The notes beneath the pieces were generated by a model. It did not search any database. It had not been told where the DNA came from and saw nothing but the letters and a program-made list of their open reading frames with translations. From Mobula birostris (Eukaryota), in NCBI RefSeq assembly GCF_030028105.1, contig NC_092374.1, positions 90,362,491 to 90,426,490 of the forward strand: a stretch of DNA of 64,000 nucleotides. Direction: 5' to 3'. Positions 15,600-46,699 of this stretch are shown piece after piece. Numbering within the stretch: position 1 is the stretch's first letter; the number at the start of each line of letters is the position of its first letter. A program made the translations under genes and the position numbers.

Positions 15600-17025
15600 G
15601 AGTCGACCAGTGTAGGAGTGGTAGCTGGTGGACCCCACTGTGGTTCCTGGTGACCACACCCGCAGCAGGTGTTGGCTGCTCGAGGAACACAAAGTTGATG
15701 ACCTGGAAAATGAGCTTCAAACATTGCGGCACACCAGGGAGGGGGAAGAGTTACCTGGATTCTCTATCTCAGGAGGTAGTCACACTCATTAGATTAGCTG
15801 TTTCAAATTCAGTCTGTGGTCAGGGTGTGACAGCAAGTGAGGTGGGTAGTGGGATCCAAGAAACAGTGCTGGAGGAGCCTCAGCCCTTGAGCCTGTCCAA
15901 CAGGTCTGAGATTCTTGCTCCCTGTGTGGACGAAAGTGGGGCTGTAGGAAGGATGAGCAACCTAACTGTGGCACCATAGTTCAGGGAGCCATTCAAAAGG
16001 GGGGAACGAAGGGAAGTGTAATGGTAATTGGGGATAGTACAGTCAGGGGAATAGACTGAGTTCCCTGTCGTGAGGATAGAGCATCCCAAAGGCTATGTTG
16101 CCTGCCTGGTGCCCAGGTTTGCGACATCTTATCTGACCTGCAGAGGAATTTGTAGTGGGAGGGGAAAGATCCAGTTGTCGTGGTCCATGTGGGTGGAATG
16201 AGGAAAGAGATTCTGCTGAGGGATTTTGAGCAGCTAGGGACTAAATTAAAAAGCAGAACCGAAAAGGTGGTAATCTCTGGATTACTACCCGAGTCATGTG
16301 CAAATTGACATAGGGTCAAGAAGATTAGAGAGGTAAATATGTGGCTCAAGGATTGGTGTGGGAGAAGTGGGTTTGTATTCATGGGAAATTGACACCAGTA
16401 TTATGGAAGGAGGAAGCTATTCCAATGGGATGGGCTCCACCTGAAACGTAATGGGACCTGGATCCTGGCGAATGGCATAACTAGGGGTTTGGATAGAGCT
16501 TTAAACTAACTAATAGGGAGGTGGGTTCAACACGTTGGAGAAGTATGGATAAAGAAAAAGAGAAAAGTGTGGATAAAGATAAAGCAAGAGGAAAAGATAA
16601 AAAGGAGAAAAGTAAGAGTGGAGTGAAGAAAAGTCAAGTGCAAAAAAGAAAAAATTACACGATTCTAAAGGCACAATGAATGTAAGGGCACTTTATCTGA
16701 ATGCCCGTTGTATTCCAAATAACTTGTGGCACAAATCAGTACAAAGGGCTATGATTTAGTGGCCAAAACAGAAACATGATTGCAGGGTGGACAGGATTGG
16801 GAATTAAATATCCAAGGTTATCAGGTTAATTAGAAGGATAGGCAGGAAGGTAAGGGAGGTGGTGTGAGGTCAGGATGATAGTGAGAGACGATATAAGATC
16901 TAAGGAGCAGAATGTTGAATCCATCTGGGTGGAGACTAGAGTAGCAAAGGGGAAAAAAATCACTGGTGGGAATTGTCTATCAGCCACCGAAGAATAACAT
17001 TACAGTGGCACAGGCAATAAGCACC
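15600..17025 (+). mobile_element. CR1 LINE 5' part (ORF1 SGNH-esterase and start of APE endonuclease), degenerate
   Basis: VIGDSTVRG, LCCLPGAQV, VVVHVG, SRTEKVVISGLLP motifs, followed by ALYLNAR and KGGGV. Confidence 0.8.
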
Positions 17026-17029
17026 TGTA

Positions 17030-17590
17030 CAACGGCTAGTTGTCGCAAGTGCTTAATCAGCCAATCATGTGGTAAAAACTCAATGCATAAAAACATGTGG
17101 ACGTGATCAAGAGGTTCCGTTGTTGTTCAGGCCAAACACATGAATAGAGAAGAAATGTGAGCTAAGCTCCTTTGATCGTGGAATGATTGTTGGTGCCAGA
17201 TAGGGTGGTTTGAGTATCTCAGAAACTGCTGATCTCCTGGGATTTTCACATACAACAGCCTCCTAAGTTTACAGAGAATGGTGCGGAAAACAAACAAACG
17301 AAACATAATATCCAGTGAGCAGCAGTTCTGTGGATAAAAGTGCCTTGTTAATGTGAGACATCAAAGGAGAATGGGCAGAAAGATTCCAGATGACAAGAAG
17401 GCTACGGTAACGCAAATAACCACGGGTTACAACAGTGGTCTGCAGAAGAGCGTCTCTGAACGCACAGGACGTCGAACCCTGGGCTACAGTGGTAGAAACT
17501 GTTTCAGATACTGTTTCCTTTAACTGTATACACTTGAACTTGAACTAGAAGACCAGACTGGGTTCCACTCCTGTACCTAATAAAGTCGCC
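17030..17590 (+). mobile_element. Tc1/mariner-derived non-autonomous element; family copies at 21300-23070, 28455-29000, 30345-30820, 45385-45955
   Basis: Transposase N-terminal remnant (DRGMIVGAR..GLSISETADLLGFSHTT); TIR-like CACTCAGTGGCCACTTTATTAGGTAC in family copies. Confidence 0.8.
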
Positions 17591-17823
17591 AATCAGGATA
17601 GAGCAGAACAGCGCAGGCACAGGCCATTTAGCATACTATGTGGTTCTGAACTAATAAAACTATTGAAGGCAGACTTAAGTAACCTGGCTACACAAGTATA
17701 TCTCTCCATTCTCTTTACATCCATCAGAGGGGGCGGTTATTTAACACTGGTGTGGAAGTTGGGGCTTCTCTGGAATTCTTGATCCTTGAGCCGAGATCAC
17801 TTCAGATGGGAAGGAGATGGACC

Positions 17824-17840
17824 TTACAGTACTGAGGCTC
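17824..17840 (-). CDS. PILR-like receptor, terminal cytoplasmic exon (G)ASVL*
   Basis: Acceptor CTTCCCTTCCCTGCCGGTTGCCAG|GA GCC TCA GTA CTG TAA; phase 1 matches the donor of the TM exon ~315 nt upstream. Confidence 0.6.
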
Positions 17841-18156
17841 CTGGCAACCGGCAGGGAAGGGAAGATGAGTGCTGGGGTACATCAGCCAAACTGACTTTAA
17901 TAATGGGGCAGATATGCTGGGCCAAGTGGCCTCGTCCTGCTCCTACTTTTTGATGGAGGTGTAGTGAGGGGAAGGGAATGATAGGCTCGGTATGCCAAGA
18001 ATCACAGAGGTGTGAACATCGGGTTAAGGAGCCACCATTCAGAGACTCACATGGTGCTGGATACTGCGGCCCTCAACAGTATGCCAAGTCTAACGGGAGG
18101 CCGATGTGAGTCATTCGGTCCGGCAGTGACCTGCGTCGTCAGAAAACGCAAGTTAC

Positions 18157-18312
18157 CTGCAACTGGGCTCCTCTTGATCAGGTAAGTGCCCACGGTCCAC
18201 ACCACTGCCTGCAGTCCGAAAACCAGCGCCGACCGGATCATCAGGATGGAGCCGTGGCTCAGCTTCCGCATCCTCGGAGTTACTGCGGTCACTCTGGGGG
18301 TCAACGAGCCTC
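18157..18312 (-). CDS. PILR-like receptor, stalk + transmembrane exon (GSLTPRVTAVTPRMRKLSHGSILMIRSALVFGLQAVVWTVGTYLIKRSPVA)
   Basis: Acceptor TTCCATCTCACAG|GA, donor GCAG|GTAACT, 156 nt, phase 1-1; hydrophobic helix with an Arg near its N-terminus followed by KR. Confidence 0.8.
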
Positions 18313-19465
18313 CTGTGAGATGGAATTCAGCGCAGTGACTTCGGGACAGGAGAAGAGGGCAGAGAAACCAACACCATGTGAGGAGCTGGGGTAGTGGAAG
18401 ATACATCAGGGGCCTTTTACAAAACTAGAAGTTAGGGACCTCGTCGATGGAAAATGGAGGACTACGTAGGAGGGATGGGTGTAAACTGATTTTAGAGTAA
18501 GATAAAAGGTTGGCACAACATCATGAGCCGAGGAGCCTGTATTGTGCTGCAGTGTTCCCTGCAGAACAAGGCAAAGATCAATGGAGTTGTTGACAGTGTG
18601 GAGGGCAATCATTTCTATGCTCAATCCCAATGTGTTGGTAAAATGAGGCTGGGAAATCACCTAAGAAGTTTAATCCGGATAAGTGTGAGCTGAAAGACAC
18701 TGGGTGCATTAATAAGGCCAGGACCATGCAGTGCTGAGGAAGAGTGGGACAGGGGTGTTTTCACTGGAGAGGGTGCAGAGAACCTTCACGGGATGTTATC
18801 TGGGACAATGTGCTTCAGTGATGGGTCTTCATTCCCTGGAATGGAAGTGGTTTGAAAGGAACAAGATTGAGGTGCACATATCCATGAGAGTACAGACAGA
18901 GTAGATAAAAGGAAATATTTCTCATTTCACATTCACAATATTTAACAACTTCATATATAAAATGTCAAGGTGAGGAGTAAGGGATTTGGAGGGTGTCTGA
19001 GAGGGAACTTTCTCACCCAGAGAGCGGTAAGTACCTGGAACTCACGGCCAGAGAGTGGGGCGGAAGCAGAGTGACAGATATATTTTAGGAAGGGTCTAGA
19101 CGAGTACATGAACTATCCATGGATAGGAGGTGAGGGGGCCAAGTGCCGGGAGATGAGATTAGTGCGGACAGGAGAAAATCTTCAGATACTGGAAATACAA
19201 GGAGCACACGCTAAATGCTCAAGGAACTCAGCAGACCAGGCAGCATCTCTGGGGGAAAAAAGTACCGTCCATGTTTCGGGCCGAAAGCCTTCGGTAGGAC
19301 GGATGTGAGTTAATTAATACGGATGTAAGTCAGCCGAGATAGGCCAAGTGGACTGTTGCCCTGCAGAGTGAAAATGTGAAGACATGAAGCTGGATTGAAG
19401 CATGGGAATTAATTGAAAGAACCTGCAGACAAGAGCAGAGGTCAGGGTAAGGATTCAGGACCCAT

Positions 19466-19837
19466 TTCTCACTGACAGAAACGTCCCTGAGATGCTTTGC
19501 CATTCTATCAGCTGATGATGATTTTCCAAAATTGTCACACGGCAGAAATAGAAATTGGAGTCATTTCCTTTCAGCCGATGTAAGCGGATAGAGCCCGTCT
19601 TGTCTCGAAGACGGTTGCCCAGCAACTCGATCCGGCCTCGGTATTCACCAATTGTCTTGTTTAGCAAAAACGTGAATATATCTGTCCTGAAATGATCAAC
19701 TTTCCATGAGATATGAATGTCTCCGGGTGTGTAGATATCTGGGTAAGTGAGGGAGCAGAGAAGAGTAGTAGTCCCCTTCTCTATAGCCTCTATGTATGCC
19801 GGATTCTCCAACCAGAACCCACGTCCATCAGTCTGCG
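19466..19837 (-). CDS. IgV exon V1, PILR/Siglec-like; splice donor mutated (AT), reads through to a stop at 19455-19457
   Basis: Acceptor CTCTCTCTCAG|CG; TLLCSLTYP, ISWKVDHF, YRGRIE, GSIRLHRL, D-x-x-x-YFCRV, WQSISGTFLSV; expected donor position reads A|ATGGGT. Confidence 0.8.
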
Positions 19838-21381
19838 CTGAGAGAGAGGAAGTGAGCAAACTGTCATTTTGGCAACCTCCAACGACATTGCACCAGGCAG
19901 CCAATCAACCCATAATACTCTTAGCATCAGACAAGCCCCTGCCCTCAGACTGTGGACAGAAAACCAGCCCATAACTTAACGCAACGCTATTACAGCTCGG
20001 GGCATCAGAGTTCGGGTTCAGTTCCGGTGTCCACTCTAGGAAAATGTGTACGTCCTTCCTGTCTGCACGTGTGTTTTCTCTGGGTGCTCCGGTTTCCTCC
20101 CACAGTGCAAGGTCGTACCGGTTAGCGGGTTAATTGGTCATTGTAAGTTGTCCTGTGTTTAGGTTAGGGTTAAATCAGTGGATTCCTGGGTGGTGCGGCT
20201 CGTATAGCCGGGAGGGCCTGTTCCGTGCTGTATCGCTAAATAAATATAAATAAATAAATATATTCTCTCATCATCAGACAATCCTCCGTTGTTTGGCTGA
20301 TGTATCAAATTTCCCTTCCCCAGTACCAGGTTCCAACTCCGAATGACCTGCAGCTTCCACGTTCACAGACTGTGGACATTAGAATCAGAATCAATTTTAA
20401 TATCACTGGCATATGTCGTAAAATTTGTTTTATGTGGCGGCAGTACATCATAGTACATAATAAAACCTGCCAAGTATCAGTGTGGAGTCCTCTTGAACTG
20501 GCACCCTGTCCCTGGATAAATGGACGCTGTAGCTGGCAAGGGTTAAGGTGATGTGCTGACAGAGGAAAGCTTGTTTACTGTTACCTGCCATTGAACAGTT
20601 ACTTTAATTAATTCTCAAATATTATTAGTCTTTAACACGTTGATTGAATTGGATTTAACAGCTGGTCTATATGGTGATTGGTACTTGTACACTCAATGCC
20701 TCTTTATCAAGTACAACCGTATACCTGCTCATTAATGAAAATATCTAATCAGCCATTTCTTAACCTTGGTTTCCTAAGGTTGTCATAGCCAGGGGTAGTA
20801 ATGGAGGTAACCTCCCACCACCTATTATATGCTCCCAATGGCATGCGCCGCAAATAGACTCTGAGAACCAAGTCCAACTCCTGGCCTTCACCGGTGGCTT
20901 AGCTACTAAGCCTGGTGGAACTGTTTCTACTGACAGGAGAAAGGGCGAAGGGGGTGGGGTCACTAGCACCTTAAAACCAGTCACTTTGGGCAGATGAGGC
21001 TTGTTAGCCGTGGTTGGCAGCTCATCTAGGAGAAGGAAAACTGATCTCCAACCTCCACTGCCTTGCGGCTATACCCACTCATGGGGAAGGCTTCAGGAGT
21101 AAACTCCAAGGAAAATCCAGAGCTGGAATCCCTAAAATTGACAGACAACTCCTACGACGCCACTGGTGCCAAATGGTATCGGTCTTGGTTTTTCCTTGGG
21201 ATTCATCAGATGAGTGGAGAGCGGGAGCCTGCTACATGAGCTGCTGCCTTGGCTTGCGTATCACATAGGCAGCTAGGACACAATATCCTTGGTCAATCTA
21301 GCCAACAAAAGGCTGCAATCAGCCAATCATATGACACTAACTCAATGCATAAAAGCATGCAGACGTGGTCAAGAGGTTCAG

Positions 21382-25831: not shown

Positions 25832-27287
25832 GTGACCTCGTTACTTCTGGTCAGGTTACCACAGACCATGGGGTGGGACAGACTAGCCCAGAGGTCCAAT
25901 AATTACACAGGGTCCCAGAGATACTGAACGTCTTTCTGAAGCCATGTCCTCTTAAAGGCAGCACTGCCCACAGAGCAGGACACTGCCCCAATCAGAATAA
26001 TGACTGTAAACAGCTCTAGAAGGTGGCATCCATGATTAAGTACACTCATGATCCAGGACATTCTCTCTTCTCGTTGCTACCATCAGGGACGAGGTACAGC
26101 AGTCTGAAGACCCATACTCAATGATTTAGAACATAGAAATCTACAGCACATTACAGGCCCTTCGGCCCACAACGTTGTGCCAGCCATGTAACCTACTCTA
26201 GAAAACTGCCTAGAATTTCCCCACCACATAGCCCACTATTTTCCTAAGCTTCATGTACCTATCTAAGAGTGTCTTAAAAGACTCTATTGTATCCACCTCT
26301 ACCGCTGTCACTGACACTCACCTCTCCGTGTGTGAAAAACTTATCTCAGACAGTCCCTCTGTGCTTACTTCCAAGCACCTACAAAATATGTCCCCTTGTG
26401 TTAGCCATTACAACCATAGGAAAAAGCCTCTGGCTATCCACACAGTTGATGCCTCTCATCATCTTAGAATCAGCTTCTTTCCCTCTGCCATCAGATTTCT
26501 GAATGGTCTGCAGTCCCATGAACCTTGTTATTTGTCCTCTGTTATTTTTAGTAATTATATCACTTTATTTTTAGTAATTGTCTCACTTTTTCTGCTTGGT
26601 AGGTTTTTTGTTATCACAATTTTTCAATCTTTAAGATAATGTCTTTTTACAGACGTTGTAAGTGTTGTTACTTCAATGTACTCATGTTATTTCTTTTGTA
26701 TAATATAACAATAAAAAGATTTGAAAAGAAAGTAATTATATCTTTACACTGTAGCGCTGTCACAAAACAACATGATTTTGTTTCTGGCAAATAAAAAAAA
26801 GAGCAAAATATTGCAAAGGTCTCGGACTCTGATTCAGGGCCACAGCACTCCCCAATGATGCCTAGAGATGAGAGCTCTCTGAAACTTTAAAGAAAATATT
26901 GCAGACATTTTACATTTTTAATTAGAGATACAGCATGGTAGCAGACCCTTTCAGCCCAACGCCAGCATGATCAATCAATCTACAAACCTGTAGGTCTTTG
27001 GACTGTGGGAGGAAACCGGAACACCTGGAGGAAACGCACATGAGCACAGGGAGAACCTACAACCTCCTGACAGGCAGCAGCGGGAATTGAACCTGAGTCG
27101 CTGGCACTGCAATAGCATTACGCTAACCATGCTGCCGCGTTGAAACATTCGGAAATGAAAACTATGAACTGGTCGAAATATTCAGCTGGTCAGACAGCCT
27201 CTGGGGAGGTGTTTGTACGACGGTTGTTTTCAGGCTCATCACAATTATTATCCAACCAAGAACAGAAACTTTGAAGCACCAGCTCAC

Positions 27288-27656
27288 CGTTCACTTTCAG
27301 GATGGTCCCAGAGGCGCTCTGCCTCATCTTATTTTCTTCCCCAAACATGGTCACACCACAGAAATAGGTGTTAGAGTCCACTTGGTTCAGCTGATGTAAG
27401 CAGATGGAACCAGTCTTGTCTCGCAGTGGGGAGCCCAGGAACTCAATCTGGCCTCGGTATTCGTGGGTGGTGTAGTTCAGTAAGGAACTGAATATATATG
27501 TGCCGTTGTAGTTACCAACTCTCCATCTGATGTCGATGCGTCTGGGTGTGGAGGTGTCCGGGTACGTGAAGGAGCAGGGGAGAGTGACAGACTCACCCTC
27601 TTTACCTTCCACGTTGCTTGCCTGCTGCACCCGAAACCCACTTCCACTGGACCGTG
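27288..27656 (-). CDS. IgV exon V2, PILR/Siglec-like, open frame with intact splice sites
   Basis: Acceptor CCCTTTCCCTCAG|CA, donor AAC G|GTGAGC, 369 nt, phase 1-1; VTLPCSFTYP, IRWRVG, YRGQIE, YFCGV, SGTILKV. Confidence 0.85.
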
Positions 27657-28195
27657 CTGAGGGAAAGGGAGGGAGCAAACAGTCATTTGGGAACCTCTGA
27701 CTGCATCTCATCCTGCAGGCAACAAGTCCATAATACTCTCAGCACCTAACAAGCCCCTGCCCTGGCTGGTAGACTAAACTCCACTCTAAGACAAGAGGGG
27801 AGGGAGGAACATGTAACCATAAGACACCATAAGACCTAGGAGAGAGGCTATATGTTCCATCAAGTCTGCTCTGCCATTCAATCCCAGATAATTTATTATC
27901 CCTCTCAAGGCCATTCTTCAGCCTTCTCCTCTTAACAGTTGACACCTCTACTAATCAATAACCTTTGAACCTCCGCATTAAATATGCCCAATAACATGGC
28001 CTGCACAGCCGTCTGTGGCCATGAATTCCACAGACTTACCATGCTCTGGCTGAAGAAATCCTTCCTCACTTCTGTAAAGGGTGTATTGTGAGGCTGTGCC
28101 CTCTGGTCCCAGACTCCCCCACTACTGGAAACACCCCTCCCTTCTTGTCAATCTCCTGAGCTGGGTCTAGAGCAACTCGAGCTGGGTCCACAACA

Positions 28196-28238: not shown

Positions 28239-29165
28239 GAACCCTCTCGGCCGACACTCCTCCCTGGGTATAAACCCTTTGCCTCGGTGACACAGACCCT
28301 GCCTCACTCCCCGTCTGTATCCGAGTTATTGCTTCTGCTTGCCACATTTCTGTGTCCACATCAGTTTCTAGTTTCAGCACCCTCTAATCATTTCCCAGCA
28401 CCTCCACTCAGTCCAGCCTTCTGCTCATTTACTCTCAAACTGTGCTACATGGAAACTCAGTGGCCATTTTACTAGGTGCATCTGTACGGTCCTCATAAGT
28501 GCAAATACCCAATCAGCCAATCATGCGTCAGCAACACAGTGTGTAAAACACAGGCATGGTCAAAAGGTTAAGTTGTTGCACAGACCAAATATCAGAATGG
28601 GAACGAAATTTGATCTCAGTGACTTTGACCGTGGAATAATTGTTGTTGCCGGACACAGTGGATTCAGAATCTCAGAAACTATTGATCTCCTGGGATCTTC
28701 ACACACAACAATTGCTAAAGTTTACAGAGAATGGTGTGAAAAAAAACAAAAAAAATCCAGTGATTGACGGTTCTGTGGGCGAAAATGCTTTATTATTGAA
28801 AAATTTCAGAGGATGTTGGCCAGACGAGTTCAAGCAGACAGGAAGCAACAGTAACTCAAGTAGCCATGTGTTATAGTGTTGGTGTGCAGAAGAGCATCTC
28901 TGATCACACTAAACATCAAACCTCAAAGTGGATGGGCTACAGCAGCAGAAGGCCATGAACATACGCACTGTGGCCACTGTATTAGATACAGGAGGTGGCC
29001 ACTGAATGTATGCAGGTGTTGAAACATTTGGAAATGAAAACATTCACCTGGTCAATGAGCCTCTCAGGAGGGCTGTGCATGTGTGTGTTTTGGGGGAAGG
29101 TGTTTTCAGATTGATTGGAATCATTATCCAGCTAAGAAGAAGAAAACTTTGAAGCACCAGCTCAC

Positions 29166-29534
29166 TGTTCACTTTCAGGACGGTCCCTGAGGCACCCTGC
29201 CACATCTTATTTTCTTCCCCAAACATGGTCACGCCACAAAAATAGGTGTTGGAGTCCACTTGGTTCAGCCGGTGTAAGCGGATGGAACCGGTCTTGTCTT
29301 GCAGTGGGGAGCCCAGGAACTCAATCCGGCCTCGGTATTCGTGGGTGGTGTGGTTCAGTAAGGAACTGAATATATATGTGTCGTTGTAGTTACCGACTCT
29401 CCATCTGATGTCGATGCGTCTGGGTGTGGAGGTGTCCGGGTACGTGAAGGAGCAGGGGAGAGTGACGGACTCACCTTCTTTACCTTCCGCATTGCTTGCC
29501 TGCTGCACCCGAAACCCACTTCCACTGGACCGTG
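29166..29534 (-). CDS. IgV exon V3, PILR/Siglec-like, intact
   Basis: Acceptor CCCTTTCCCTAAG|CA, donor AAC A|GTGAGC, 369 nt, phase 1-1; about 23 nt differences from V2 by manual alignment. Confidence 0.87.
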
Positions 29535-30129: not shown

Positions 30130-31572
30130 GGACCTTTCTCACCCTGGGTGTAGACCCCTTGACTCGGTCACACAGACTCTGTCTCTCTCCCCATCTGTTT
30201 TTGTGTTTTTGCTTCTGCTTTCCACATTTCTCTGTCTCCATATCCGTTCCAGGTTTTGACACCCTCCAATCATTTCCCAACCCTTCCCCTGGGTCCAACG
30301 TCCTGTTCAGATTCTCTCAGGGTTACAGACAGCGCTACAGGTACACTCGGTGGCCACTTTATTAAGTACGCCTGTACACCCCTCGTTAATGCAAATATCT
30401 AACCAGCCAATCATCTGTCAGCAACTGAATGCATAAAAGCATGCAGACACAGTCAAGAGGTTCAGTTGTTCTTCAGACCAAACAGCAGAATGGGAATAAA
30501 TTGGATCTCAGGGAATTTGATCATGGAATGATTGTTGGTGCCAGATAGAGTGGTTTGAGTATCTCAGATTCTATTGATCTCCTGGGATTTTCACGCACAG
30601 CTGTCTGAGAATTGTGCAAAAAATGGAAAACATCCAGTGACAGCCAGTTCTGTGGGAGAAAACACCTTGTTAATGAGATAGGTCAGATGAGAATGGCCAT
30701 ACTGATCCAAGTCAACAGGAACTCAAATAACCATGTGCTACATCAGTGGTGTACAGAAGAGCATTTATGAATGCACAACATGGTGAATCTAGGAGTGGAT
30801 GAGCAGAAGACAATGAATATACACTCTTAACAAACAAAAGAAATCTGCTTACACTGGAAATCCAAGCAACACACACAAATTGCTGGAGGAACTGAACAGG
30901 GCAGGTAGCATCTGTGGAAAACTGTAAAGTCAACTGTAAGGGTTTCTTCTTTTATGTTACTGCTAAGGTGAATAAAATGACTTCTCTACTGTTAACTGCT
31001 GAGGCAGTGGTTCTCTATAGCAGCATGTTTGGGTTATAATTAGTGATAATGGGATTTGTATTCATTTGTTAACCAATTGGGATAGATGTTATTCTTTCTG
31101 TCTGTGTGAAAGCTGTTAGTTTGCGCAGGCTTGGGGGAGAAGGCGCGAGGAGGATGAAGAGAGAAGACGTGGCTTGAAGAGACAGTTGCCGGACCTGCTG
31201 GGCCTGGGCTCGTGGCGGGAGCCCAGGGGTCGACGACGAGTGGAGGAGGATCAGCGAAAGGGAATCCGTGAGCTCCAATGTTTGTGCACTGGACATGCTT
31301 ATAAGATTATCGGCATCTTTTATTTGTTTTCCTTTTCTTTTGTTTCTCTACTAACCCCATACTTAAAATCTTAATTAATATAAATTAATCTAAATTAATA
31401 TAAAATCTTAATCATTTAACCGCACATTGTGGACTGAATGTTATTTCAGGGTACTGATGTTACACAGGGAACACAACACGTAGCATCCACCCAAACAGGA
31501 GTGCTAAAGTTTGGCCGGGGAGTGGGCGTCACCCTCGAGATCATGCCACTAGGCAAAGCAAGTCTTACAATG

Positions 31573-31590
31573 TGGGGGCTTGTCCGGGAT
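31573..31590 (+). promoter_or_regulatory. Primer-binding site complementary to tRNA-Pro
   Basis: TGGGGGCTTGTCCGGGAT, one mismatch from the canonical tRNA-Pro PBS TGGGGGCTCGTCCGGGAT, 3 nt after the 5' LTR. Confidence 0.8.
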
Positions 31591-33649
31591 ATGGATTTTT
31601 GTAGGGTGCTGTGTGATTGCCCTGTTTAAATCAGTGCTGGTGTGCCTCTGTGGGATTGGGGTTAGTAACGGGCTGGATATTCATACCTTGGATGAATTGT
31701 TAATTTGATTTTTGGGTATGGTTAAAGCTGATGGTGAGTTTGAAGTCGTAGTGCAAAAAGTTGACGAAATGGCGGGCTCAGACCTTTCTTTAGTGGGGGC
31801 TAGCGCTGACGTCACAGAGGTGGGATTGCCAGTGTCTATGGGTGCCCCGGGTGAGGCGGGGCCAGGGGCTGTCCATACTGTCAGGAGGGAGGGGGAAGAG
31901 TGGTCTGAATTGGAATGTTTAATCAGCCCTCGTCCCCAAGTGGAGAGTGAGAATTCTGAGTTAGTGTCCGCCTTTGTTTCTCTGGCGAATAGATGTTCCC
32001 GCTACGGCAGACTCAGTTTTTCCTTTGGAATAATGCCCACCCCTAAAGGGGCGGATGCGTACAAGATGTGGGCGGAACGGATCTCTCAGTTGTTAGATGA
32101 GCGGCGGTGCTCGGTTGAGGGAAAGCGACAGGGATTGGTTGAAAATTTGAGTAGGCGGGCTGCTGATGGTGTTACAACTGTCAGGGTCAATTACCCCATA
32201 GTGACAACGGCCAGTTATCTGAAAGCGTGGAAAAATGCATTTGGTTCAATTGGAAGTAACATACAGCACCTGGGGGGCTTTCCATACCTGTGTCAGGAGA
32301 TTGGGGGAAAGTTTTCAGTGTATCTTCTCTGGCTAAGAGGGCAGCTAAATTTCTTATAGTGCCAGAGGGATCATTTAAGGGGATCAGCCCCTCCCTCAGT
32401 TGTTCAGCTGATCAGAGAGGTGTCGGGAAACTTAGTGGAGGCCCAGTGGGGGAACGGCTTGGGGTCTCTGGGGGAACACATTCCCAGCAATGTACCAAGG
32501 AACTCCAGAAAGGAAAAGACCCTATTTCTGAAGGCTTAGAGGGACCACGCTTCAGTGTGTCATTACGGATGGAGGGAAGCTATGCTAAGGCCACCCTGGA
32601 CACTGGGGCGCAGGTCAAGTTGCTGTACAGTTTGTTTTACAACCAGTATTTGAAGCATTTACTTTTGACACCATTCAGGGAATTGGAGATTTGGAGTATC
32701 CGTACTGGGGATCATCCAGAAGATGATTATTGGTCAGTGAAACTGGAGTTCTCGGAGGCCAAGGTGTGGGTGTCTGAGGTTTGTGAGTCATTAGTGCTGA
32801 TGTGTCTGGACACTGTTGAGACGGGAAGCATGTCAACTCGGGAGGGGATCCACACCCCGCTTGTGAAGAAGCACGTGGGGGCCTGCCAGAGGAAGGCGGG
32901 TGAGAGCTGTCTGGGGGCATTATCTGTGCACGCAGTGTTTCGAGCTGCTTGTGAGGACGTGTATGGCAGCATTGGGCAAGGTACCGAAGTTAAATAAGAG
33001 CTAATGATGGTACGGCCTGGGGGAGTATCTGAGAGTGAAGCCCTCTTAGTGGATGCTCCGAAATACCACAAAGGGGTAGGGGGGAGTTGACTGCTGAAGA
33101 TGCCTCGGTGACAGAGAGGTCATGGCGACTGGCCCCTGCAGCCGTGGAAGACATAGGTAGCGTGTGTGGAGGTTGTGTGGGTTCTAGGACTCTGAACAGG
33201 AGCACCGTCCCTGACCAGTATGCGGTCCCGAGGGTTGAAGACGCACTGGTCTGTTTGAGAGGTGTGAAGTGGTTCAATGTGCTGGATCTGAGGAGTGAAT
33301 ATTGCCAGATCCCAATGAGTGAGGCTGACAAGGAGAAGACGGCCATTATAAGTCCCCTGGGATTCTTGCAATCCGAAAAGATGTTCTAGGGCTATCTGGA
33401 GCCCTTGCAACTTTCCAGCGGGGCATGAGGAAGACGGTGGGGGATGTGAAATCATTTGGATTTTTGGTGCATTTGGATGATCTCCTAGTATTTGGATCTG
33501 CCTCAGAAGAATATGAAGCGAGGCTGTTCAGGGTTGCAGGAGCGGCTGAGAACTAAAGAGTTAAAGCTTTCTCTGGACACGTGCCAGGTCTGGCAAAGGT
33601 CGCAGCTCGTGAGTGACTGTCTCTATGGGATCAAGTTTGAAGTGACGAC

Positions 33650-34190
33650 GGAGAGACAGAATTCCCAGCAGAGACTGGAGAAAGTGATCCAGAACCAGTT
33701 GGAAGACTTGCAAGTTGGGGAAGACAAAGAAAGCTGTCTGACTAAGGCAAACAGAAAACTGAGAGCCCAGAGAGGGGGGTTTGACTACACTTCCGAGGAG
33801 GTGAAGCAGTTGCGGCCAGATCTCGGAAGAGGGAAGCGGAAGCTTGAAGGGAATGAGAAGATGACCATCGACAGTTTAAATGAAGTGAGAAAACTGAAAG
33901 TTGACCTGGAAAAAGTCATTAGGAAGAAAATACTGGAGATAATTTCAGTGAACACTAAACTGGAGGCTGAACACTCTTTACATGCTGCTTTTCACGTCGA
34001 GTGGAAGAAGCTGGTGGAGTAACTGAGTCCCAGACTGAGATGGCCAAGTAGCGTGAGTCAGAACTGCTGAGACTGTGGTGATAGTTGGAGGAATCCAAGA
34101 AGAAGCTGTCGTCTGGATTACAAGAGGCTGAAGAGACTGCAGAAGCAGTCCAGGCCAAGTGCTCCAGCGTGGAGAGAACAAACCAGCAGC
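33650..34190 (+). pseudogene. Captured sarcomeric myosin heavy chain rod fragments (possibly MYH16-like) inside the Gypsy element
   Basis: [62 protein letters not shown] and [36 protein letters not shown] match recalled MYH rod motifs. Confidence 0.78.
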
Positions 34191-35251
34191 TACCAATCGA
34201 GGAAAAGGGGAAGAATACAGATTTGACAGATGATGAGATGGAGGTGTGGTACATGCTGCCTTTCGCTAACTTCCCCTTGCTGGATGAAGAGACTCCTGGC
34301 CCTTCTCCCACTGAGTCAGGTGAGGTGGGGGTGGCTAGCTGTGGGCAGCCTGGGTTACTGCAGGACCCTGAAGGAGAGACTGGGGGGGAGAGGGGGAGCA
34401 TGAGTGAGAGATTGAGAGAGGATTCAGCAAGCAGACCCGAGGTATCCCCAGTAGAGTCTGACCCTGAAGGGTTTGGGTGAGGGGGTACAGAGGTCTCGGA
34501 GGACTAGGAAACTCCCAGATAGGTTGGCCTATGTAGTGCCTGGGGAACAGGGCATGAGGTCTACTGTTTGGGGAGCAATGTCACTGTTTGTACCTGGACT
34601 GAGGTTTGTGTCTGCAGGAAGGGTTGGCGAGTTATTTAGAAGTCATGAGGACATGACTAAATTTGGGGGGGGGAAGAGTGTAAGGGTTTCTTCTTTTATG
34701 TTACTGCTAGGGTGAACTCTGTACTGTTAACTGCTGAGGCAGTGGTTCTCTACAGCAGCATGTTTAGGTTATAATTAGTGATAACGGGACATGTATTCAT
34801 TTGCTAACCAATAGGGATAGATGTTATTCTTTCTGTCTGTGTGAAAGCTGTTAGTTTGTGTGAGATTTGGTGGAGAAGGCGCAAGGAGGATGAGGAGAGA
34901 AGACGTAGCTTGAAGAGATGGTTGCTGGACCTGCTGGGCCTGGGCTCAGGGCAGGAACCTAGGGACCGACTAGCAAAGGAGGATCAGCGAAAGGGAATCC
35001 ATGAGCTCCAACGTTTGTGCACTGGACATGTTTATGAGATTATTGGTGCCTCTTATTTGTTTTCCTTTTCTTTTGTTTCTCTACTAACCCCATACTTAAA
35101 TATAAAATCTTAATCGTTTAACCGCACGTTGTGGACTGAATGTTATTTCGGGGTACTGATGTTTCACAGGGGACACAACACGCAGCATCCATCCAAACAA
35201 GAGTGCTAAAATTTGGCCGGGTGAGGGTGCCACCACCAAGATCATGCCACA

Positions 35252-36620
35252 ACGTTTTGGGTGAAGACCCTTCCTCAGGACTGGAAGAAAGATGAGGAGT
35301 CACAATAAGAAAGTGGGGGCAGGGAAAGAAGAATCACAGGTGATAGGTGAAACCGGAAGGAGGAAGGGTGGCGTAAAGACCTGGAAGTTGATTGCTGTAA
35401 GGGATACAGGGCTGAAGAAGGGGAATCTGATCGGAGAAGACAGAAGGCCATGGAAGAAAGAAAAGCGGGAGGAGCACCAGAGGAGGGCGGTGATAGGCTG
35501 GTAAGGATATATAGTAAGAGGGAAATGTAATTGGTGAAGGTGGGGAGGGGTGCATTACTGGAAGTTCGAGAAATCAATGTTCATACCATCAGGCTGGAGG
35601 CTACCCAAATGGAATATAAGGTGTTGTTCATTGAACCTGAAGTGTGGCCTCATTGCGACAGCACAGGAGGCCATGGACTGACATATTGGAATGGGAATGG
35701 GAAGTGGAACTAAAATGGGAGTCCCTGCTTTTTCTGGTAGACCTACCATCCCACCAGCACATAATTCTCTGTAACTTCTGCCATCTCCAACGGGATCCCA
35801 CCACCAAGCGCATCTTCCCCTCCACTTTCTGCTTTCCACAGGGATCGCTCCCTACGCGACTCCCTTGTCCATTCATCCCTCCCCACTGATCTCCCTCCTG
35901 GCACTTTTCCTTGCAAGCAGAACAAGTGCTACACCTGCCCCTACACTTCCTCCCTCACTACCATTCAGGGCCCCAAACAGTCCTTCCAGGTGAGGTGACA
36001 CTTCACCTGTGAGTCTGTTGGGGTCAAATACTGTGTCCGGTGCTCCCAGCGTGGCCTCCCAGTGAGACCCGACGTAGATTGCGAGACAGTTTTGCTGAGC
36101 ACATTTGCCAGAAAAAGGGGAATCTCCCAATGGCCACCTCTTTCAGTTTCATTTCCTATTCCCATTCCGACAATTCAGTCTCTGGCCTGTCACAATGAGG
36201 CCACACTCAGGCTGAAGGAGCGACATCTTATATTCTGCCTGGGTAGCCTCCAGCCCGATGGCATAAACAACAATTTCTTGAACTTCCAGTAATGTCCCCA
36301 CCCCTCCCCACTTCACTATTCTCCATTCCCATTTTCCTCTCACCTTATCTCCTTACCAACCTATCACTTCCCTCTGGTGCTGCCTCCCCACTTTCTCTCT
36401 TCCATGGCCTTCTGTGTTCTCCTGTCAGATTCCCCCTTCTCCAGTCCTGTATAGCTTACACCAATCAACTTCCCAGCTCTTCACTTCACCCCTCCCGGTT
36501 TCACCTAAGAACCTTGTGGTTCTTCCTCCCCTCCCACCACTTTCTTACTCTGGCTCCTCATCTTTTTTTTCCAGTCCTGATGAAGATTCTCAGCCTGAAA
36601 TGTCAGCTATACTCTTTTCC
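35252..36620. mobile_element. Penelope-like element: 5'-truncated GIY-YIG endonuclease copy (+, 35730-36620) fused to an inverted terminal copy (-, 35252-35730)
   Basis: CYTCPYT, HFTCESVGVKYCVRCSQ and HLIFCLGSLQPDGIN on +; HLIFHLGSLQPDGMNIDFSNF on -; both end in the pLTR/hammerhead unit. Confidence 0.82.
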
Positions 36621-37282: not shown

Positions 37283-40200
37283 AACCATAGAACCATAGAA
37301 ACTACAGCACAGAAACAGGCCTTTTGGCCCTTCTTGGCTGTGCCGAACCATTTTCTGCCTAGTCCCACCGACCTGCACACGGACCATATCCCTCCATACA
37401 CCTCCCATCCATGTATCTATCCAATTTATTCTTAAATGTTAAAAAAGAACTCGCATTTACCACCTCATCTGGCAGCTCATTCCATACTCCCACCACTCTC
37501 TGTGTGAAGAAACCCCCCCAATGTTCCCTTTAAACTCCCCCCCCCCACCCTTAACCCATGCCCTCTGGTTTTTTTCTCCCCTTGCCTCAGTGGAAAAAGC
37601 CTGCTTGCATTCACTCTATCTATACCCATCATAATTTTATATACCTCTATCAAATCCCCCCTCATTCTTCTACGCTCCAGGGAATAAAGTCCTAACCTAT
37701 TCAACCTTTCTCTGTAACTGAGTTTCTCAAGTCCCGGCAACATCCTTGTAAACCTTCTCTGCACTCTTTCAACCTTATTTATATCCTTTCTGTAATTTGG
37801 TGACCAAAATTGAACACAATACTCCAGATTCGGCCTCACCAATGCCTTATACAACCCCATCATAACATTCCAGCTCTTATACTCAATACTTCGATTAATA
37901 AAGGCCAATGTACCAAAAGCTCTCTTTACAACCCTATCTACCTGTGACGACACTTTTAGGGAATTTTGTATCTGTATTCCCAGATCCCTCTGTTCCACTG
38001 CACTCCTCAGTGCCTTACCATTAACCCTGTATGTTCTACGTTGGTTTGTCCTTCCAATGTGCAATACCTCACACTTGTCAGTATTAAACTCCATCTGCCA
38101 TTTTTCAGCCCATTTTTCCAGCTGGTCCAAGTCCCTCTGCAGGCTCTGAAAACCTTCCTCACTGTCTACTACACCTCCAATCTTTGTATCATCAGCAAAC
38201 TTGCTGATCCAATTTACCACATTATCATCCAGATCATTGATATAGATGACAAATAACAATGGACCCAGCACTGATCCCTGTGGCACACCACTAGTCACAG
38301 GCCTCCACTCAGAGAAGCAATTCTGTACCACCACTCTCTGGCTTCTTCCATCGAGCCAATGGCTAATCCAATTTACCACCTCTCCATGTATACCTAGCGA
38401 CTGAATTTTCTTAACTAACCTCCCATGCGGGACCTTGTCAAAGGCCTTACTGAAGTCCATGTAGACAATATCCACTGCCTTCCCTTCATCCACTTTCCTG
38501 GTAACCTCCTCGAAAAACTCCAACAGATTGGTCAAACATGACCTACCACACACAAAACCATGTTGACTCTCCCTAATAAGCCCCTGTCTATCCAAATGCT
38601 TGTAGATTCTGTCTCTTAGTACTCCCTCCAATAACTTACCTACTACTGACGTTAAACTCACCGCCCTATAATTTCCCGGATTACTTTTCGATCCTTTTTT
38701 AAACAACAGAACAACATGAGCCACTCTCCAATCCTCCGGCACTTCACCCGTAGACAGCGACATTTTAAATATTTCTGCCAGGGCCCCCGCAATTTCAACA
38801 CTAGTCTCCTTCAAGGTCCGAGGGAACACTCTGTCAGGTCCCGGGGATTTATCCACTTTAATTTTCCTCAAGACAGCAAGCGCCTCCTCCTTTTCAATTT
38901 GTACAGTTTCCATGGTCTCACTACTTGATTCCCTCAATTCCATAGATTTCATGCCAGCTTCCTTAGTAAATACAGACGCAAAAAAACCTATTTAAGATCT
39001 CTCCCATTTCCTTTGGTTCCGCACAAAGCCGACCACTCTGATCTTCAAGAGGACCAATTTTATCCCTTACAATCCTTTTGCTCTTAATATACCTGTAAAA
39101 GCTCTTTGGATTATCCTTCACTTTGACTGCCAAGGGAACCTCATGTCTTCTTTTAGCCCTCCTGATTTCTTTCTTAAGTATTTTCTTGCACTTCTTATAC
39201 TCCTCAAGCACCTGATTTACCCCCTGTTTCCTATACATTTCATACAACTCCCTCTTTTTCTTTATCAGAGTTGCAATATCCCTTGAGAACCAAGGTTCCT
39301 TATTCCTATTCAATTTGCCTTTAATCCTGACAGGAACATATAAACTCTGCACTCTCAAAATTTCCCCTTTGAAGGCTTCCCACCTACCAATCACATCTTT
39401 GCCAGAGAACAACCTGTCCCAATCCACGCTTTTTAAATCCTTTCTCATTTCTTCAAATTTGGCCTTCTTCCAGTTCAGAACCTCAACTCTAGGACCAGAT
39501 CTATCCTTGTCCATGATCAAATTGGAACTAATGGTGTTATGATCACTGGAACCAAAGTGCTCCCCTACACAGACTTCTGTCACTTGCCCTAATTCGTTTC
39601 CTAACAGGAGATCCAATATTGCATCCCCTCTAGTTGGTCCCTCTATATATTGATTTAGAAAACTTTCCTGAACACATTTTACAAACTCTAAACCATCTAG
39701 ACCCCTAACAGTATGGGAGTCCCAATCAATGTATGGAAAATTAAAATCCCCTACCACCACAACTTTATGTTTCCTGCAGTTGCCTGCTATCTCTCTGCAG
39801 ATTTGCTCTTCCAAGTCTCGTTGACTATTGGGTGGTCTGTAATACAATCCCACTAATGTGGCCATACCTTTCCTGTTTCTCAGCTCCTAAGGACTCAGTA
39901 GACAAGCCCTCTAATCTGTCCTGCCTGAGCACTGCTGTAATATTTTCCCTAACAAGCAATGCTACTCCCCAACCTTTCATTCCTCTGCCTCGATCACATC
40001 TGAAACATCGGAACCCTGGAATATTAAGCTGCCAGTCCCGTCCCTCCTGTAGCCAAGTTTCACTAATTGCTATAACATCATAATTCCACGTGTCAATCCA
40101 TGCCCTCAACTCATCCGCCTTCCCCGCAATACTCCTAGCATTGAAATATATACACCTCAGAAGATTTTTACCACCACTCACAACCTTTTTATCAGCGGAT

Positions 40201-44760: not shown

Positions 44761-46699
44761 CCAGTGTCTGGGTTGGCTGCTGGTCAAATATCAGAGTTCG
44801 GAGTTCAATTCTGACATCATCTGTAAGGAGTCTATAAGTCCTCCCTGTGAAATGTGAGGGTTTCCACCGGGTGCTCTGATTTCCTCTTACAGTTCAAAGT
44901 CATACTGGTTAGTAAGGCACCGTAAGTTGTTGCGTGATTAGGCTAGAGTTAAATCGGGGGATCGCTGGGCGGCGCAGCTCCAAGGACTGGAAGGGGTTAT
45001 TCCGTGCTGTATCTCAATAGATAAAAGCCTTTTACTGTAGCTCAAGTTCAGCCAGAATCACAGCCGTGTATATTGTGTCATTAGTTGTTTTGTGGCAGCA
45101 GTACAGTGCACGTGCACGTGACCATAAAAAAAACACTTGCCAATGCAATTGCTCTGTTTGCTGTAATGGCTAGGATCTTCCTGTGGCCACCTATTTCAAT
45201 TCCACCTCCTATTCCCACACTGACCTGCTTCTCATATCATCCGTCCTCCCTCACCCAGCCTAATACCCTCCCATTCACCTGGTCTTGCCTATGACTTGCA
45301 GTTTGTACTCCTTCCCCTCCCCCATCCTTTTATTCTGGGTTCTGCCCCCTTCCTTTCCAATCCTGATAATGGGTCTTGGGTCAAAAGATTGACTATACAC
45401 ACAGTGGCTACATAATTAAGGTACCTCTTGTACCTTAAAAAATGGCCACTGAGTGTATGTCTGTGGTGTTTTGCAGCTGTAGGTTCAAAGTTTAATGTGT
45501 TGTGTGTTCGGAGATGCTCTTCTGCACACCACTGTTGTAACACATGGTTATTTGAGTTACTGTTGCATTCCTGTCAGCTTCAATCAGTCCGGCTATTCTC
45601 CCCTGACTTTTCCAAATAACAAGGTGCTTTACCAACAGAAATGCCACTTTGCTGCTTTTTTTTTGTTTTTTGCACCATTCTCTGTAAACGCTAGAGACAG
45701 TTGTGCATGAAAATCTCAAGAGATCAGCAGTTTCAGAGATACTCAAATCACCCCATCTGGCATCAACAATCATTCCACGGTCAAAGTCCCTTAGATCACA
45801 TTTCTTCCCCATTGTGGTATTTGATCCAAACAACAACTGAACCTCTTGACCACGTCAGCATGATTTTATGCATTGTTGCTGAGATAGGCCAGTTAGATAC
45901 TTGCATTTGCAAGCAGGTGTACAGGTGTACCCAATAAAGTGGCCACTCAGTGTTCATTTACCTCCATGGATGCTGCCTGGCCTACTGAGTTCCTCCAGCA
46001 ATTTGTGTATTTGTTGCCAATAGCAAGTCCCTAGTAGCAGGGTTCAATTCCTGACATGGCCTGTAAGAAGTTTGTACATTCTCTCTGTGACCACATGGGT
46101 TTCCTCTGGGTGCTCCAGTTTCCTCCCACAGTCCAAAGATGTACTAGTTCACAAACACAAGAAAATTTGCAGATGCTGGAAATCCAAGCAAAGCACACAA
46201 AATTCTGGAAAATCTCAGCAGGGCAGGTATCATCTGTGGAAAAGAGTAAACAGTCAACATTTTGGGCTGAGACCCTTTGTTAGGACTGGAAAAGAAAAAG
46301 TTGGTCTTGGCCTAAAACGTTGACTGTTTACTCTTTTCCATAGATGATGCCTGCCCTGCTGAGTTCCGCCTGCATTTTGTGGGTGCCGGTTAGTGGGTTA
46401 ATTGGCCATTATTAAAGTGTCCTGGGATTAGGTTAGGGTGAGGATTAAATCAGCAGATTGCTGGGCAGTTTTGCTGGAAGGGCTGAAAAGGCCTACTCCG
46501 CATTGTAAATAAACATTGGATTATCCGGTTAATTGTACTTGCTCCTTGGGTGTGAGGGATTCAAGTCCTCCCGTGACTGCCACCAGAAATCAGAATGTAG
46601 TGGAAGCCAAAGCTATTAGGATTTGTGAAAGAATAAAGAATATATCCAAGACAGATTGGAAAAGGTGCATAAGACACAGCTTTATTCTACCGGTGAAAG

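What the first reader, a model, noticed from the sequence alone, without database searches (positions are those of the whole stretch)
33650..34190. Gypsy LTR retrotransposon carrying apparently spliced myosin heavy chain sequence in place of RNaseH/integrase
Seen: pol stops at the RNaseH motif [13 protein letters not shown], switches to [63 protein letters not shown], then to [42 protein letters not shown], and returns to the Gypsy pol C-terminus, PPT and 3' LTR. Knowledge: these match two non-adjacent parts of the sarcomeric MYH rod (about residues 1040-1110 and 1370-1420), and KMTIDSLNE resembles MYH16 KMTIDNLNE. In vertebrate MYH genes the first stretch spans several exons, yet no introns are present here. 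Inference: retrovirus-style transduction of a host mRNA by RT template switching, creating a non-autonomous chimeric element that may have amplified.
Basis: partly seen in the sequence, partly recalled or inferred. Interest (0 to 1): 0.8.

Follow-up and report, generated by a model that had tools for sequence, protein, structure and literature searches.

The report
Ray retrotransposon carrying captured myosin fragment
An old, decayed Ty3/Gypsy-type jumping gene in this window has lost its RNase H and integrase, carries in their place an intron-free, internally shortened piece of a MYH16-like muscle myosin gene, and belongs to a multi-copy family of stingrays and manta/devil rays whose copies public annotation names as myosin genes.

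Summary
A complete LTR element lies at 30935-35249. It has TG..CA LTRs, a 4-bp target duplication, a polypurine tract, a PNMA-like gag and a Ty3-type RT remnant. It has no detectable RNase H or integrase. At 33639-34225 it holds about 590 bp that match only class II myosin heavy-chain rods.

There are three co-linear rod segments, not two. In MYH7 numbering they cover about 987-1105, 1147-1174 and 1386-1432.

The first segment crosses two exon junctions shared by a bird and a catfish MYH gene, one of which is also seen in the ray Narcine, with no intron. The third crosses one junction. The joints between segments lie inside exons, next to short repeats. They are therefore deletions or template switches, not skipped exons.

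The closest genuine gene is a batoid MYH16-like gene of Narcine (65% identity; 40% or less for any other myosin). This favours a host origin.

Eleven annotated proteins of four myliobatiform rays carry the same joints. They lie on different chromosomes and fall into subfamilies, so the chimera amplified.

The mechanism, LTR-mediated retroposition by template switching, is already described, so this is a new member of a known kind.

The parts
30931..30934 (+). Target-site duplication, left copy (CAAC)
   Evidence: The same 4 bases directly follow the 3' LTR.
30935..31548 (+). 5' LTR (TG...CA)
   Evidence: Self-BLAST and alignment to the 3' LTR. Ends fixed. K2P to the 3' LTR is 0.113.
31661..32356 (+). 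gag-like gene (PNMA/Ty3-type capsid), one part
   Evidence: Pfam PNMA E 1.9e-11. PDB PNMA2 E 9e-7. 45-46% identical to Mobula 'modulator of apoptosis 1-like' P0043. One stop relative to that relative (count only).
32357..33143 (+). Internal region where a protease would be expected; no recognisable domain
   Evidence: No Pfam hit on any stop-free stretch.
33144..33638 (+). Reverse-transcriptase remnant (Ty3/Gypsy type), one part, ending in a 10-residue linker of unknown origin
   Evidence: Weak RVT_1 hit in the window (E 0.006-0.008). The better-preserved Hypanus copy P0001 aligns over this stretch, and its best PDB hit is Ty3 RT residues 114-227, E 2.9e-12. Four in-frame stops relative to P0001 (count only). 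The linker has no significant myosin or Pfam similarity.
33639..34225 (+). MYH16-like myosin rod fragment, sense strand, intron-free, made of three co-linear rod segments (MYH7 about 987-1105, 1147-1174, 1386-1432); one part
   Evidence: Supported. Relative to in-frame copies (P0011, P0006, P0012), this copy has one frame change and three stops (counts only).
34226..34480 (+). 3' 'tail' reading frame shared by all copies; origin unknown (possibly the element's own 3' coding end)
   Evidence: Shared with P0005, P0007, P0009, P0011 and P0012. No myosin similarity in any frame. No Pfam or protein-database hit.
34665..34678 (+). Polypurine tract
   Evidence: A G-rich purine run lies directly before the 3' LTR.
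34679..35249 (+). 3' LTR (TG...CA)
   Evidence: Supported.
35250..35253 (+). Target-site duplication, right copy (CAAC)
   Evidence: Supported.

Best explanation
This is one old, decayed copy of a non-autonomous Ty3/Gypsy-derived LTR retrotransposon family of batoid rays.

Proposed history:
1. In an ancestor of the family, reverse transcription of the element's RNA switched onto a co-packaged, spliced mRNA of the host's MYH16-like myosin heavy chain. It then switched back to the element.
2. As a result, the part of pol after the RT palm (thumb, RNase H, integrase) was replaced by a sense-strand piece of the myosin rod.
3. Two stretches inside the captured piece were lost at short repeated motifs of the coiled coil. 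This happened either during the same reverse transcription or in later replication cycles.
4. The resulting chimera kept its LTRs, gag, polypurine tract and packaging functions. It was copied to new chromosomal sites by enzymes supplied by autonomous relatives, and it diversified into subfamilies in stingrays and manta/devil rays.
5. The copy in the window inserted with a 4-bp target duplication and has since decayed.

Shown: the element's anatomy, the myosin identity, the absence of introns, the shared joints in many copies, and the absence of RNase H and integrase.

Inferred: template switching as the joining mechanism, supply of enzymes in trans, and the order of capture and internal deletions.
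For: 1. Element anatomy. LTR pair with TG..CA ends, 4-bp TSD and PPT. PNMA-like gag. Ty3-type RT. No RNase H or integrase domain on any stop-free stretch.

2. Myosin identity. Specific, co-linear matches to class II myosin rods.

3. Spliced origin. Segment 1 is gap-free across junctions that are exon borders in other genes. Positions 43|44 and 91|92 of the queried stretch are exon borders in bird MYH6 and catfish MYH. Positions 14|15 and 43|44 are exon borders in the Narcine MYH16-like gene, as shown by a cassette exon among its isoforms. Segment 3 crosses the catfish junction at P0016 residue 1400.

4. Joints between segments. They lie inside exons. Segment 1 ends about 7 residues before a junction. 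Segment 2 lies wholly inside one large exon. Each joint is flanked by the same short motif on both parental sides in a stand-in MYH.

5. Host origin. Segment 1 is 65% identical, gap-free, to the Narcine MYH16-like product. It is 40% or less identical to every other myosin among 1.84 billion representatives. Vertebrate MYH scores above insect and spider MYH.

6. Amplification. Eleven annotated proteins carry the same 5' joint, inner joints and/or 3' joint. They come from Hypanus sabinus (3 chromosomes), Mobula hypostoma (at least 4), M. birostris (2) and Hemitrygon akajei (1). They fall into subfamilies of 82-91% identity. The window copy has its own TSD.

7. No L1-type features. There is no poly(A) and no 3' end of the mRNA.

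8. Precedent. The structure matches the features listed for LTR-mediated retroposition (PMC5131818).
Against: - No autonomous partner element was found, so it is not shown exactly what was replaced, or that the 3' tail is pol.
- The parental MYH16 mRNA of the same species was not available. Microsimilarity at the two outer joints could therefore not be examined.
- Two Mobula proteins (P0012, P0038) have the same inner joints and tail but about 13 more rod residues upstream and no linker. The 5' joint has therefore either changed after capture, or the rearranged myosin block existed before it entered the element.
- The relatives are gene models, and their DNA could not be fetched. LTRs around the other copies were therefore not seen, and some differences between them may be modelled splices.
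- Exon borders come from other species' genes, not from the parent itself.
Confidence: 0.78

Rival explanations
1. The rearranged myosin block existed first. A MYH16-derived pseudogene or aberrant transcript already carried the two internal deletions, and perhaps the 'tail'. The element captured that ready-made block.
For: P0012 and P0038 (Mobula, 'myosin-16-like') share the inner joints and the start of the tail. They continue as myosin rod further upstream (from MYH7 about 974) and lack the linker seen in the LTR-embedded copies. The tail has no recognisable pol homology.
Against: The tail has no myosin similarity in any frame and is followed at the expected distance by the PPT and 3' LTR. 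P0012 and P0038 are gene models whose first residues may come from a spliced upstream exon. Every other copy has the pol-side joint. The genuine Narcine gene has neither deletion in the part that can be compared.
Confidence: 0.12
2. Capture at the DNA level. A genomic piece of the myosin gene was joined to the element by read-through transcription or recombination. Its introns were removed later, when the chimeric element RNA was spliced before reverse transcription (the model proposed for maize Bs1).
For: The end product (intron-free, sense-oriented, inside an LTR element) would look the same. Sense orientation is required for this route and is observed.
Against: Both ends of the fragment and both inner joints lie inside exons. 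Several extra breaks would be needed. Nothing of intron or flanking gene sequence remains.
Confidence: 0.07
3. A LINE-made processed pseudogene of the myosin mRNA landed inside a resident Gypsy copy. Later deletions removed RNase H and integrase.
For: LINE elements with endonuclease and RT reading frames are present in the window.
Against: There is no poly(A) and no 3' end of the mRNA; the fragment stops near residue 1432 of about 1935. No duplication flanks the insert. The same joints recur on many chromosomes in four species together with element sequence on both sides. The element's own TSD shows the chimera moved as an LTR element.
Confidence: 0.02
4. There is no capture at all. The stretch is a generic coiled coil native to the element, or a chance resemblance.
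For: Pfam's Myosin_tail_1 model did not report the window pieces.
Against: The matches are position-specific and co-linear, and they hit myosin II rods only (E down to 1.8e-11). Other coiled coils are not significant. Identity to a batoid MYH16-like gene product is 65%. All pieces beat every one of 300 shuffles except a 9-residue one.
Confidence: 0.01

Closest known systems
LTR-mediated retroposition / chimeric LTR retrocopies (Tan et al. 2016, Genome Res, PMC5131818)
   Same: A partial, intron-free host mRNA copy replaces part of the internal reading frame of an LTR retrotransposon. Both LTRs are kept. There is no poly(A) and no L1-type duplication. [quoted passage not shown] The chimera can be retroposed again as a non-autonomous element.
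   Different: [quoted passage not shown] This case is old (LTR K2P 0.113). It occurs in cartilaginous fish. It has diversified into subfamilies across two ray families. Microsimilarity at the outer joints could not be checked.
Maize Bs1 (Elrouby and Bureau 2001, 2010, as cited in PMC5131818)
   Same: A non-autonomous LTR element that carries fragments of cellular genes in place of pol functions and persists as a family.
   Different: Bs1 is a plant element with pieces of three unlinked genes. Here there are three pieces of one gene, in their original order.
Host-gene transduction by retroviruses (established knowledge; cited in PMC5131818)
   Same: A spliced cellular sequence is inserted in sense orientation, replaces replication genes, makes the carrier defective and leaves it dependent on a helper. 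Deletions occur at short repeats during reverse transcription.
   Different: There is no env and no evidence of infectivity. The captured piece is an internal coiled-coil fragment with no obvious activity. It lies in a Ty3/Gypsy-type element, not a retrovirus.
MYH16 ('masticatory' myosin heavy chain) gene
   Same: This is the best-matching gene lineage. NCBI names several copies 'putative uncharacterized protein MYH16'. The Narcine MYH16-like product is 65% identical to segment 1. MYH16 is the most divergent vertebrate sarcomeric MYH and is known from sharks (PMC6402096).
   Different: Only about 195 of about 1935 residues are present. There is no motor domain and no introns. Two internal deletions are present, and the fragment is embedded in a transposon. 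It is not a myosin gene.

Membership tests
Ty3/Gypsy (Metaviridae-type) LTR retrotransposon | Two direct LTRs with TG..CA ends flanked by a 4-6 bp target duplication | tested here: met
   LTRs at 30935-31548 and 34679-35249. TSD is CAAC.
Ty3/Gypsy (Metaviridae-type) LTR retrotransposon | Polypurine tract before the 3' LTR and a tRNA primer-binding site after the 5' LTR | tested here: inconclusive
   The PPT is present at 34665-34678. No primer-binding site was recognised by eye after the 5' LTR, and none was searched for formally.
Ty3/Gypsy (Metaviridae-type) LTR retrotransposon | Gag with a Ty3-type capsid fold | tested here: met
   Pfam PNMA E 1.9e-11. PDB PNMA2 E 9e-7.
Ty3/Gypsy (Metaviridae-type) LTR retrotransposon | RT closest to Ty3/Gypsy RTs | tested here: met
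   The window has RVT_1 at E 0.006 only. Family member P0001 has Ty3 RT as its best PDB hit, E 2.9e-12.
Ty3/Gypsy (Metaviridae-type) LTR retrotransposon | Pol order PR-RT-RNase H-IN (an autonomous member) | tested here: not met
   No protease, RNase H or integrase domain was found on any stop-free stretch. It is a non-autonomous derivative, not a complete member.
LTR-mediated retrocopy (template-switch chimera) | The host-derived insert lacks introns at parental exon junctions | tested here: met
   Gap-free across junctions mapped in the Narcine MYH16-like gene, bird MYH6 and catfish MYH. The parent gene of the same species was not available.
LTR-mediated retrocopy (template-switch chimera) | The insert replaces, rather than interrupts, the element's internal sequence | tested here: inconclusive
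   RNase H and integrase are absent, and the internal region is only about 3.1 kb. No autonomous relative was found for direct comparison.
LTR-mediated retrocopy (template-switch chimera) | Microsimilarity between element and mRNA at the fusion points | not testable with these tools
   This needs the parental mRNA and the autonomous element. The inner joints do show shared short motifs in a stand-in MYH.
LTR-mediated retrocopy (template-switch chimera) | No poly(A) tail and no L1-type duplication at the insert | tested here: met
   The sequence around 33639 and 34225 shows neither feature.
LTR-mediated retrocopy (template-switch chimera) | Re-mobilised as a non-autonomous element (several insertion sites with identical joints) | tested here: met
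   Eleven proteins from four species on different chromosomes share the joints. The window copy has its own TSD. LTRs of the other copies were not seen, because no DNA could be fetched.
Sarcomeric myosin heavy chain gene (MYH16) | Motor domain, neck and continuous rod of about 1100 residues encoded by about 40 exons | tested here: not met
   Only three rod pieces totalling about 195 residues are present. They are intron-free and lie inside an LTR element.
LINE-mediated processed pseudogene | 3' end of the mRNA with poly(A), flanked by a target duplication | tested here: not met
   The fragment is internal to the coding sequence and has no A-run.

The most novel reading that the evidence does not exclude
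The chimera may be more than decaying debris. It may be an order-wide, long-lived family whose gag-pol-myosin-rod reading frame is kept open and transcribed in several rays. One or more copies may have been taken over by the host as short coiled-coil proteins, or the captured rod may help the element, for example by multimerising its polyprotein. This would be a vertebrate counterpart of maize Bs1 with a functional captured domain.
Probability: 0.07. Interest if true: 0.75.

Novelty: new member of a known kind. Interest (0 to 1): 0.5.

Why it matters
1. It is a clear example, in a cartilaginous fish, of host-gene capture by an LTR retrotransposon followed by amplification into a family. In animals this has mostly been documented as isolated young loci.

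2. It is a practical annotation trap. At least eleven RefSeq proteins of rays are copies of this transposon, not myosin genes. Their names include 'putative uncharacterized protein MYH16', 'myosin-16-like', 'myosin heavy chain, cardiac muscle isoform-like' and 'striated muscle-like'. They would distort myosin gene counts and any inference about MYH16 loss or gain in batoids.

3. The shared joints give a simple presence/absence marker for dating the capture and for batoid phylogeny.

Tried and rejected
Searches that led nowhere:
- Pfam on all stop-free stretches of the element gave no Myosin_tail, RNase H, integrase or protease hit. The myosin identity came from PDB sequence searches instead.
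- The middle myosin piece alone gave nothing against PDB. It was confirmed by shuffling and by in-frame relatives.
- The protein search with the segment-3-plus-tail frame found nothing at E 0.001 or below.
- The gag search found only one relative. No autonomous partner element was found.
- Literature searches for a myosin or MYH16 fragment in ray transposons found nothing.

DNA that could not be fetched:
- DNA of the ray copies and of the Narcine gene could not be retrieved. The Narcine isoforms were not on record. For three other ray proteins the 'file too large' message came back. LTRs around the other copies, and the parent's own exon map, are therefore missing.
- As a substitute I used the Narcine isoform differences plus a catfish and a bird MYH locus.

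Ideas tested and rejected:
- The linker before the myosin part is itself diverged myosin rod. It is not significant.
- The tail is myosin in another frame or strand. It is not.
- The inner joints are skipped exons. They lie inside exons.

The host species of the window was not determined.

- After I wrote, in my reasoning only, some myosin-rod letters and generic pol motif letters from memory.
- Outputs, and notebook entry 1, show bounds of stop-free stretches, which indirectly show where stops lie. In my reasoning I also located some of them. They were used only to make query references and are not repeated here.

Full report
**What is there**

The + strand between 30935 and 35249 is a complete LTR retroelement insertion.
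- Two direct repeats of 614 and 571 bp begin with TG and end with CA. They are 90% identical over 566 aligned bases (K2P 0.113, 49 transitions to 9 transversions).
- They are flanked by the same four bases, CAAC.
- The 3' repeat is preceded by a G-rich polypurine run.

The internal region is only about 3.1 kb.
- It begins with a gag-like frame that matches Pfam PNMA (E 1.9e-11) and the PNMA2 capsid in PDB (E 9e-7).
- Further on there is a weak RVT_1 match (E 0.006).
- A better-preserved family member from Hypanus sabinus (P0001) aligns over the same stretch. Its best solved-structure hit is the Ty3 reverse transcriptase, residues 114-227 (E 2.9e-12).
- No protease, RNase H or integrase domain was found on any stop-free stretch of the element.

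The carrier is therefore a Ty3/Gypsy-type element that cannot be autonomous.

**The myosin-like stretch**

- The first stretch aligns over 115 residues, without a single gap, to MYH7 996-1110 (E 1.8e-11). Every significant hit is a class II myosin heavy chain, and lamin, the next coiled-coil protein, has E 0.28.
- The last stretch aligns to MYH7 1386-1422 (E 2.4e-8 against a crystallised MYH7 1361-1425 fragment).
On its own it is too short for PDB. Against a full-length lungfish MYH (P0016) it aligns to residues 1157-1184, exactly co-linear with the others, with z about 10 over shuffles. In in-frame relatives the match to the corresponding MYH4 stretch is obvious.

Taken together, the myosin-derived DNA runs from about 33639 to about 34225. 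It represents MYH7 about 987-1105, 1147-1174 and 1386-1432, in the original order and in the sense orientation of the element.

Relative to in-frame relatives, the window copy has one frame change and three stops in this part, four stops in the RT remnant and one in gag (counts only).

**Is it spliced?**

I could not fetch the parent gene, so I mapped exon borders in three other ways.

1. The Narcine bancroftii locus that NCBI names 'MYH16 / myosin-6-like' has six isoforms. Aligning them shows a 29-residue cassette exon and alternative ends. This places exon borders at positions 14|15, 43|44 and about 121 of the queried first stretch.

2. A catfish MYH locus (L001) and a bird MYH6 contig (L002) were mapped with the lungfish protein. 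Both give borders at P0016 residues 1044, 1092 and about 1122, that is positions 43, 91 and 121 of the same stretch. The catfish locus adds borders at 1252, about 1296, 1334, 1400 and 1462.

3. These borders were compared with the segment bounds.
   - Segment 1 crosses two borders shared by bird and catfish (43|44 also in Narcine), plus the Narcine-only border at 14|15, with no inserted sequence.
   - Segment 3 crosses the border at 1400.

The fragment therefore passed through a spliced RNA.

The joints between the segments are not exon borders.
- Segment 1 ends about seven residues before the border at 1122.
- Segment 2 lies wholly inside the large exon 1122-1252.
- Segment 3 starts four residues before the border at 1400.

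In the stand-in parent, both sides of each inner joint carry the same short motif of the coiled-coil repeat. That pattern is what deletions or template jumps between short repeats leave behind. It is not what exon skipping leaves behind.

**Which myosin, and whose?**

A search of 1.84 billion representative proteins with segment 1 returned only 34 hits.
- The best hits are short ray proteins.
- The Narcine MYH16-like product comes next.
- After that come ordinary vertebrate MYHs at 40% identity or less.

Over segment 1, the Narcine product is 65% identical without gaps, as close as the other copies of the chimera are to the window (59-68%). NCBI's names for several of the ray proteins ('putative uncharacterized protein MYH16', 'myosin-16-like') point the same way.

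MYH16 is described as the most divergent vertebrate sarcomeric MYH and is known from sharks (PMC6402096). This fits the low identity to MYH7, MYH6 and MYH4. Insect and spider myosins score lower than vertebrate ones. A host-lineage (batoid) origin is therefore favoured over a foreign one.

**A family, not a single accident**

Eleven annotated proteins share the window's joints.
- P0001-P0005 and P0009 read from RT or linker sequence into the myosin part at the same point.
- P0006, P0007, P0011, P0012 and P0038 read all three myosin segments in one frame, with the same inner joints.
- P0002, P0005, P0006, P0007, P0009, P0011, P0012 and P0038 read from myosin into the same tail.

They come from four species, all Myliobatiformes. 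Narcine is Torpediniformes.
- Hypanus sabinus: three chromosomes.
- Mobula hypostoma: at least four chromosomes.
- M. birostris: two chromosomes.
- Hemitrygon akajei: one chromosome.

Identities over segment 1 define subfamilies.
- A dasyatid subfamily at 82-91%.
- A Mobula group (71-82% among non-orthologous copies) that includes a 97% orthologous pair, and a further orthologous pair at 95%.
- The window copy and P0011 sit near the centre, at 61-76% to everything.

One copy lies inside the span of an ADGRA3-like gene on the opposite strand. Together with the window copy's own target duplication, this shows that the chimera itself was transposed repeatedly over a long period.

**Mechanism**

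The anatomy matches the four hallmarks listed for LTR-mediated retroposition (Tan et al. 2016, PMC5131818).
- A partial mRNA copy is present.
- It replaces part of the element's internal frame.
- There is no poly(A) and no L1-type duplication.
- The chimera can be copied again as a pseudo-LTR element.

I therefore propose that reverse transcriptase switched from element RNA to a co-packaged spliced MYH16-like mRNA and back. Two further jumps or deletions then occurred at short repeats. Autonomous relatives later supplied the missing enzymes.

The joining mechanism, the helper and the order of events are inferences.

**What remains uncertain**

The joint lies only about 35-40 residues past the last residue that matches the Ty3 RT palm. 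I cannot say what this linker is.
- The tail after the myosin part is shared by all copies. It has no similarity to myosin in any frame or to anything else. Its position before the PPT fits the element's own 3' end, but this is unproven.
- P0012 and P0038 carry about 13 more rod residues upstream and lack the linker. Either the original capture was longer and the common 5' joint is secondary, or the rearranged block predates its entry into the element.
- All relatives are gene models, and their DNA could not be fetched.

**Comparison and verdict**

This is a new member of a known kind: an LTR-mediated, partial, intron-free retrocopy inside a defective Ty3/Gypsy element. Its closest analogues are the chimeras of Tan et al. 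2016, maize Bs1 and, by analogy, host-gene capture by retroviruses.

The less usual features are the host group, the age, the spread into subfamilies across two ray families, and the fact that public annotation labels the copies as myosin genes.

After I wrote some myosin and pol motif letters from memory in my reasoning, then stopped.

Outputs, and notebook entry 1, show bounds of stop-free stretches. These were used only to build query references and are not repeated here.

Noticed in passing
window 27190-27711 (-) and 29044-29508 (-): Two open frames about 1.3 kb apart each hold an immunoglobulin V-set domain (Pfam E 4e-11 and 1e-11; weaker CD22-like Ig hit). They are probably exons of one or two Ig-superfamily receptor genes just upstream of the LTR element.
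   Followed up: partly
window 37477-39865 (-) and 824-2125 (+): LINE-type retrotransposon frames. The first locus has a 300-aa endonuclease frame followed by a 491-aa RT frame that look nearly intact. The second is a 433-aa RT frame with the ALKBH8_N-type tail often seen on such RTs.
   Followed up: partly
window 30827-30934; similar at 46148-46258, 7253-7345, 3885-3959, 15017-15101, 45963-46008: The roughly 100 bp directly before the 5' LTR belong to a short interspersed repeat with at least five other copies in the window (78-85% identity). The LTR element therefore inserted into, or right next to, an older repeat.
   Followed up: no
window 35270-35400 versus 36456-36585: An inverted pair of about 130 bp (78% identity) lies just downstream of the 3' LTR. 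Its nature is unknown; it is probably two copies of another repeat in opposite orientation.
   Followed up: no
window 55052-55211, gap 55212-55409, 55981-56132; 56882-57461: Purine-rich GGA/GAGG-type tandem arrays flank the single assembly gap. A degenerate CACA-rich array with 16 and 75-81 bp periods follows. The gap was left untouched.
   Followed up: no
window 16001-20000: This stretch has unusually strong GC skew (+0.20) and AT skew (+0.15) compared with its neighbours. It was not examined.
   Followed up: no
proteins P0008, P0010, P0039-P0042 (Narcine bancroftii, one locus): The only genuine MYH16-like gene recovered from a batoid is modelled as six short isoforms (205-254 aa) of rod sequence with no motor domain. 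This may mean that MYH16 is degenerate in that ray, or it may only reflect an incomplete gene model.
   Followed up: partly
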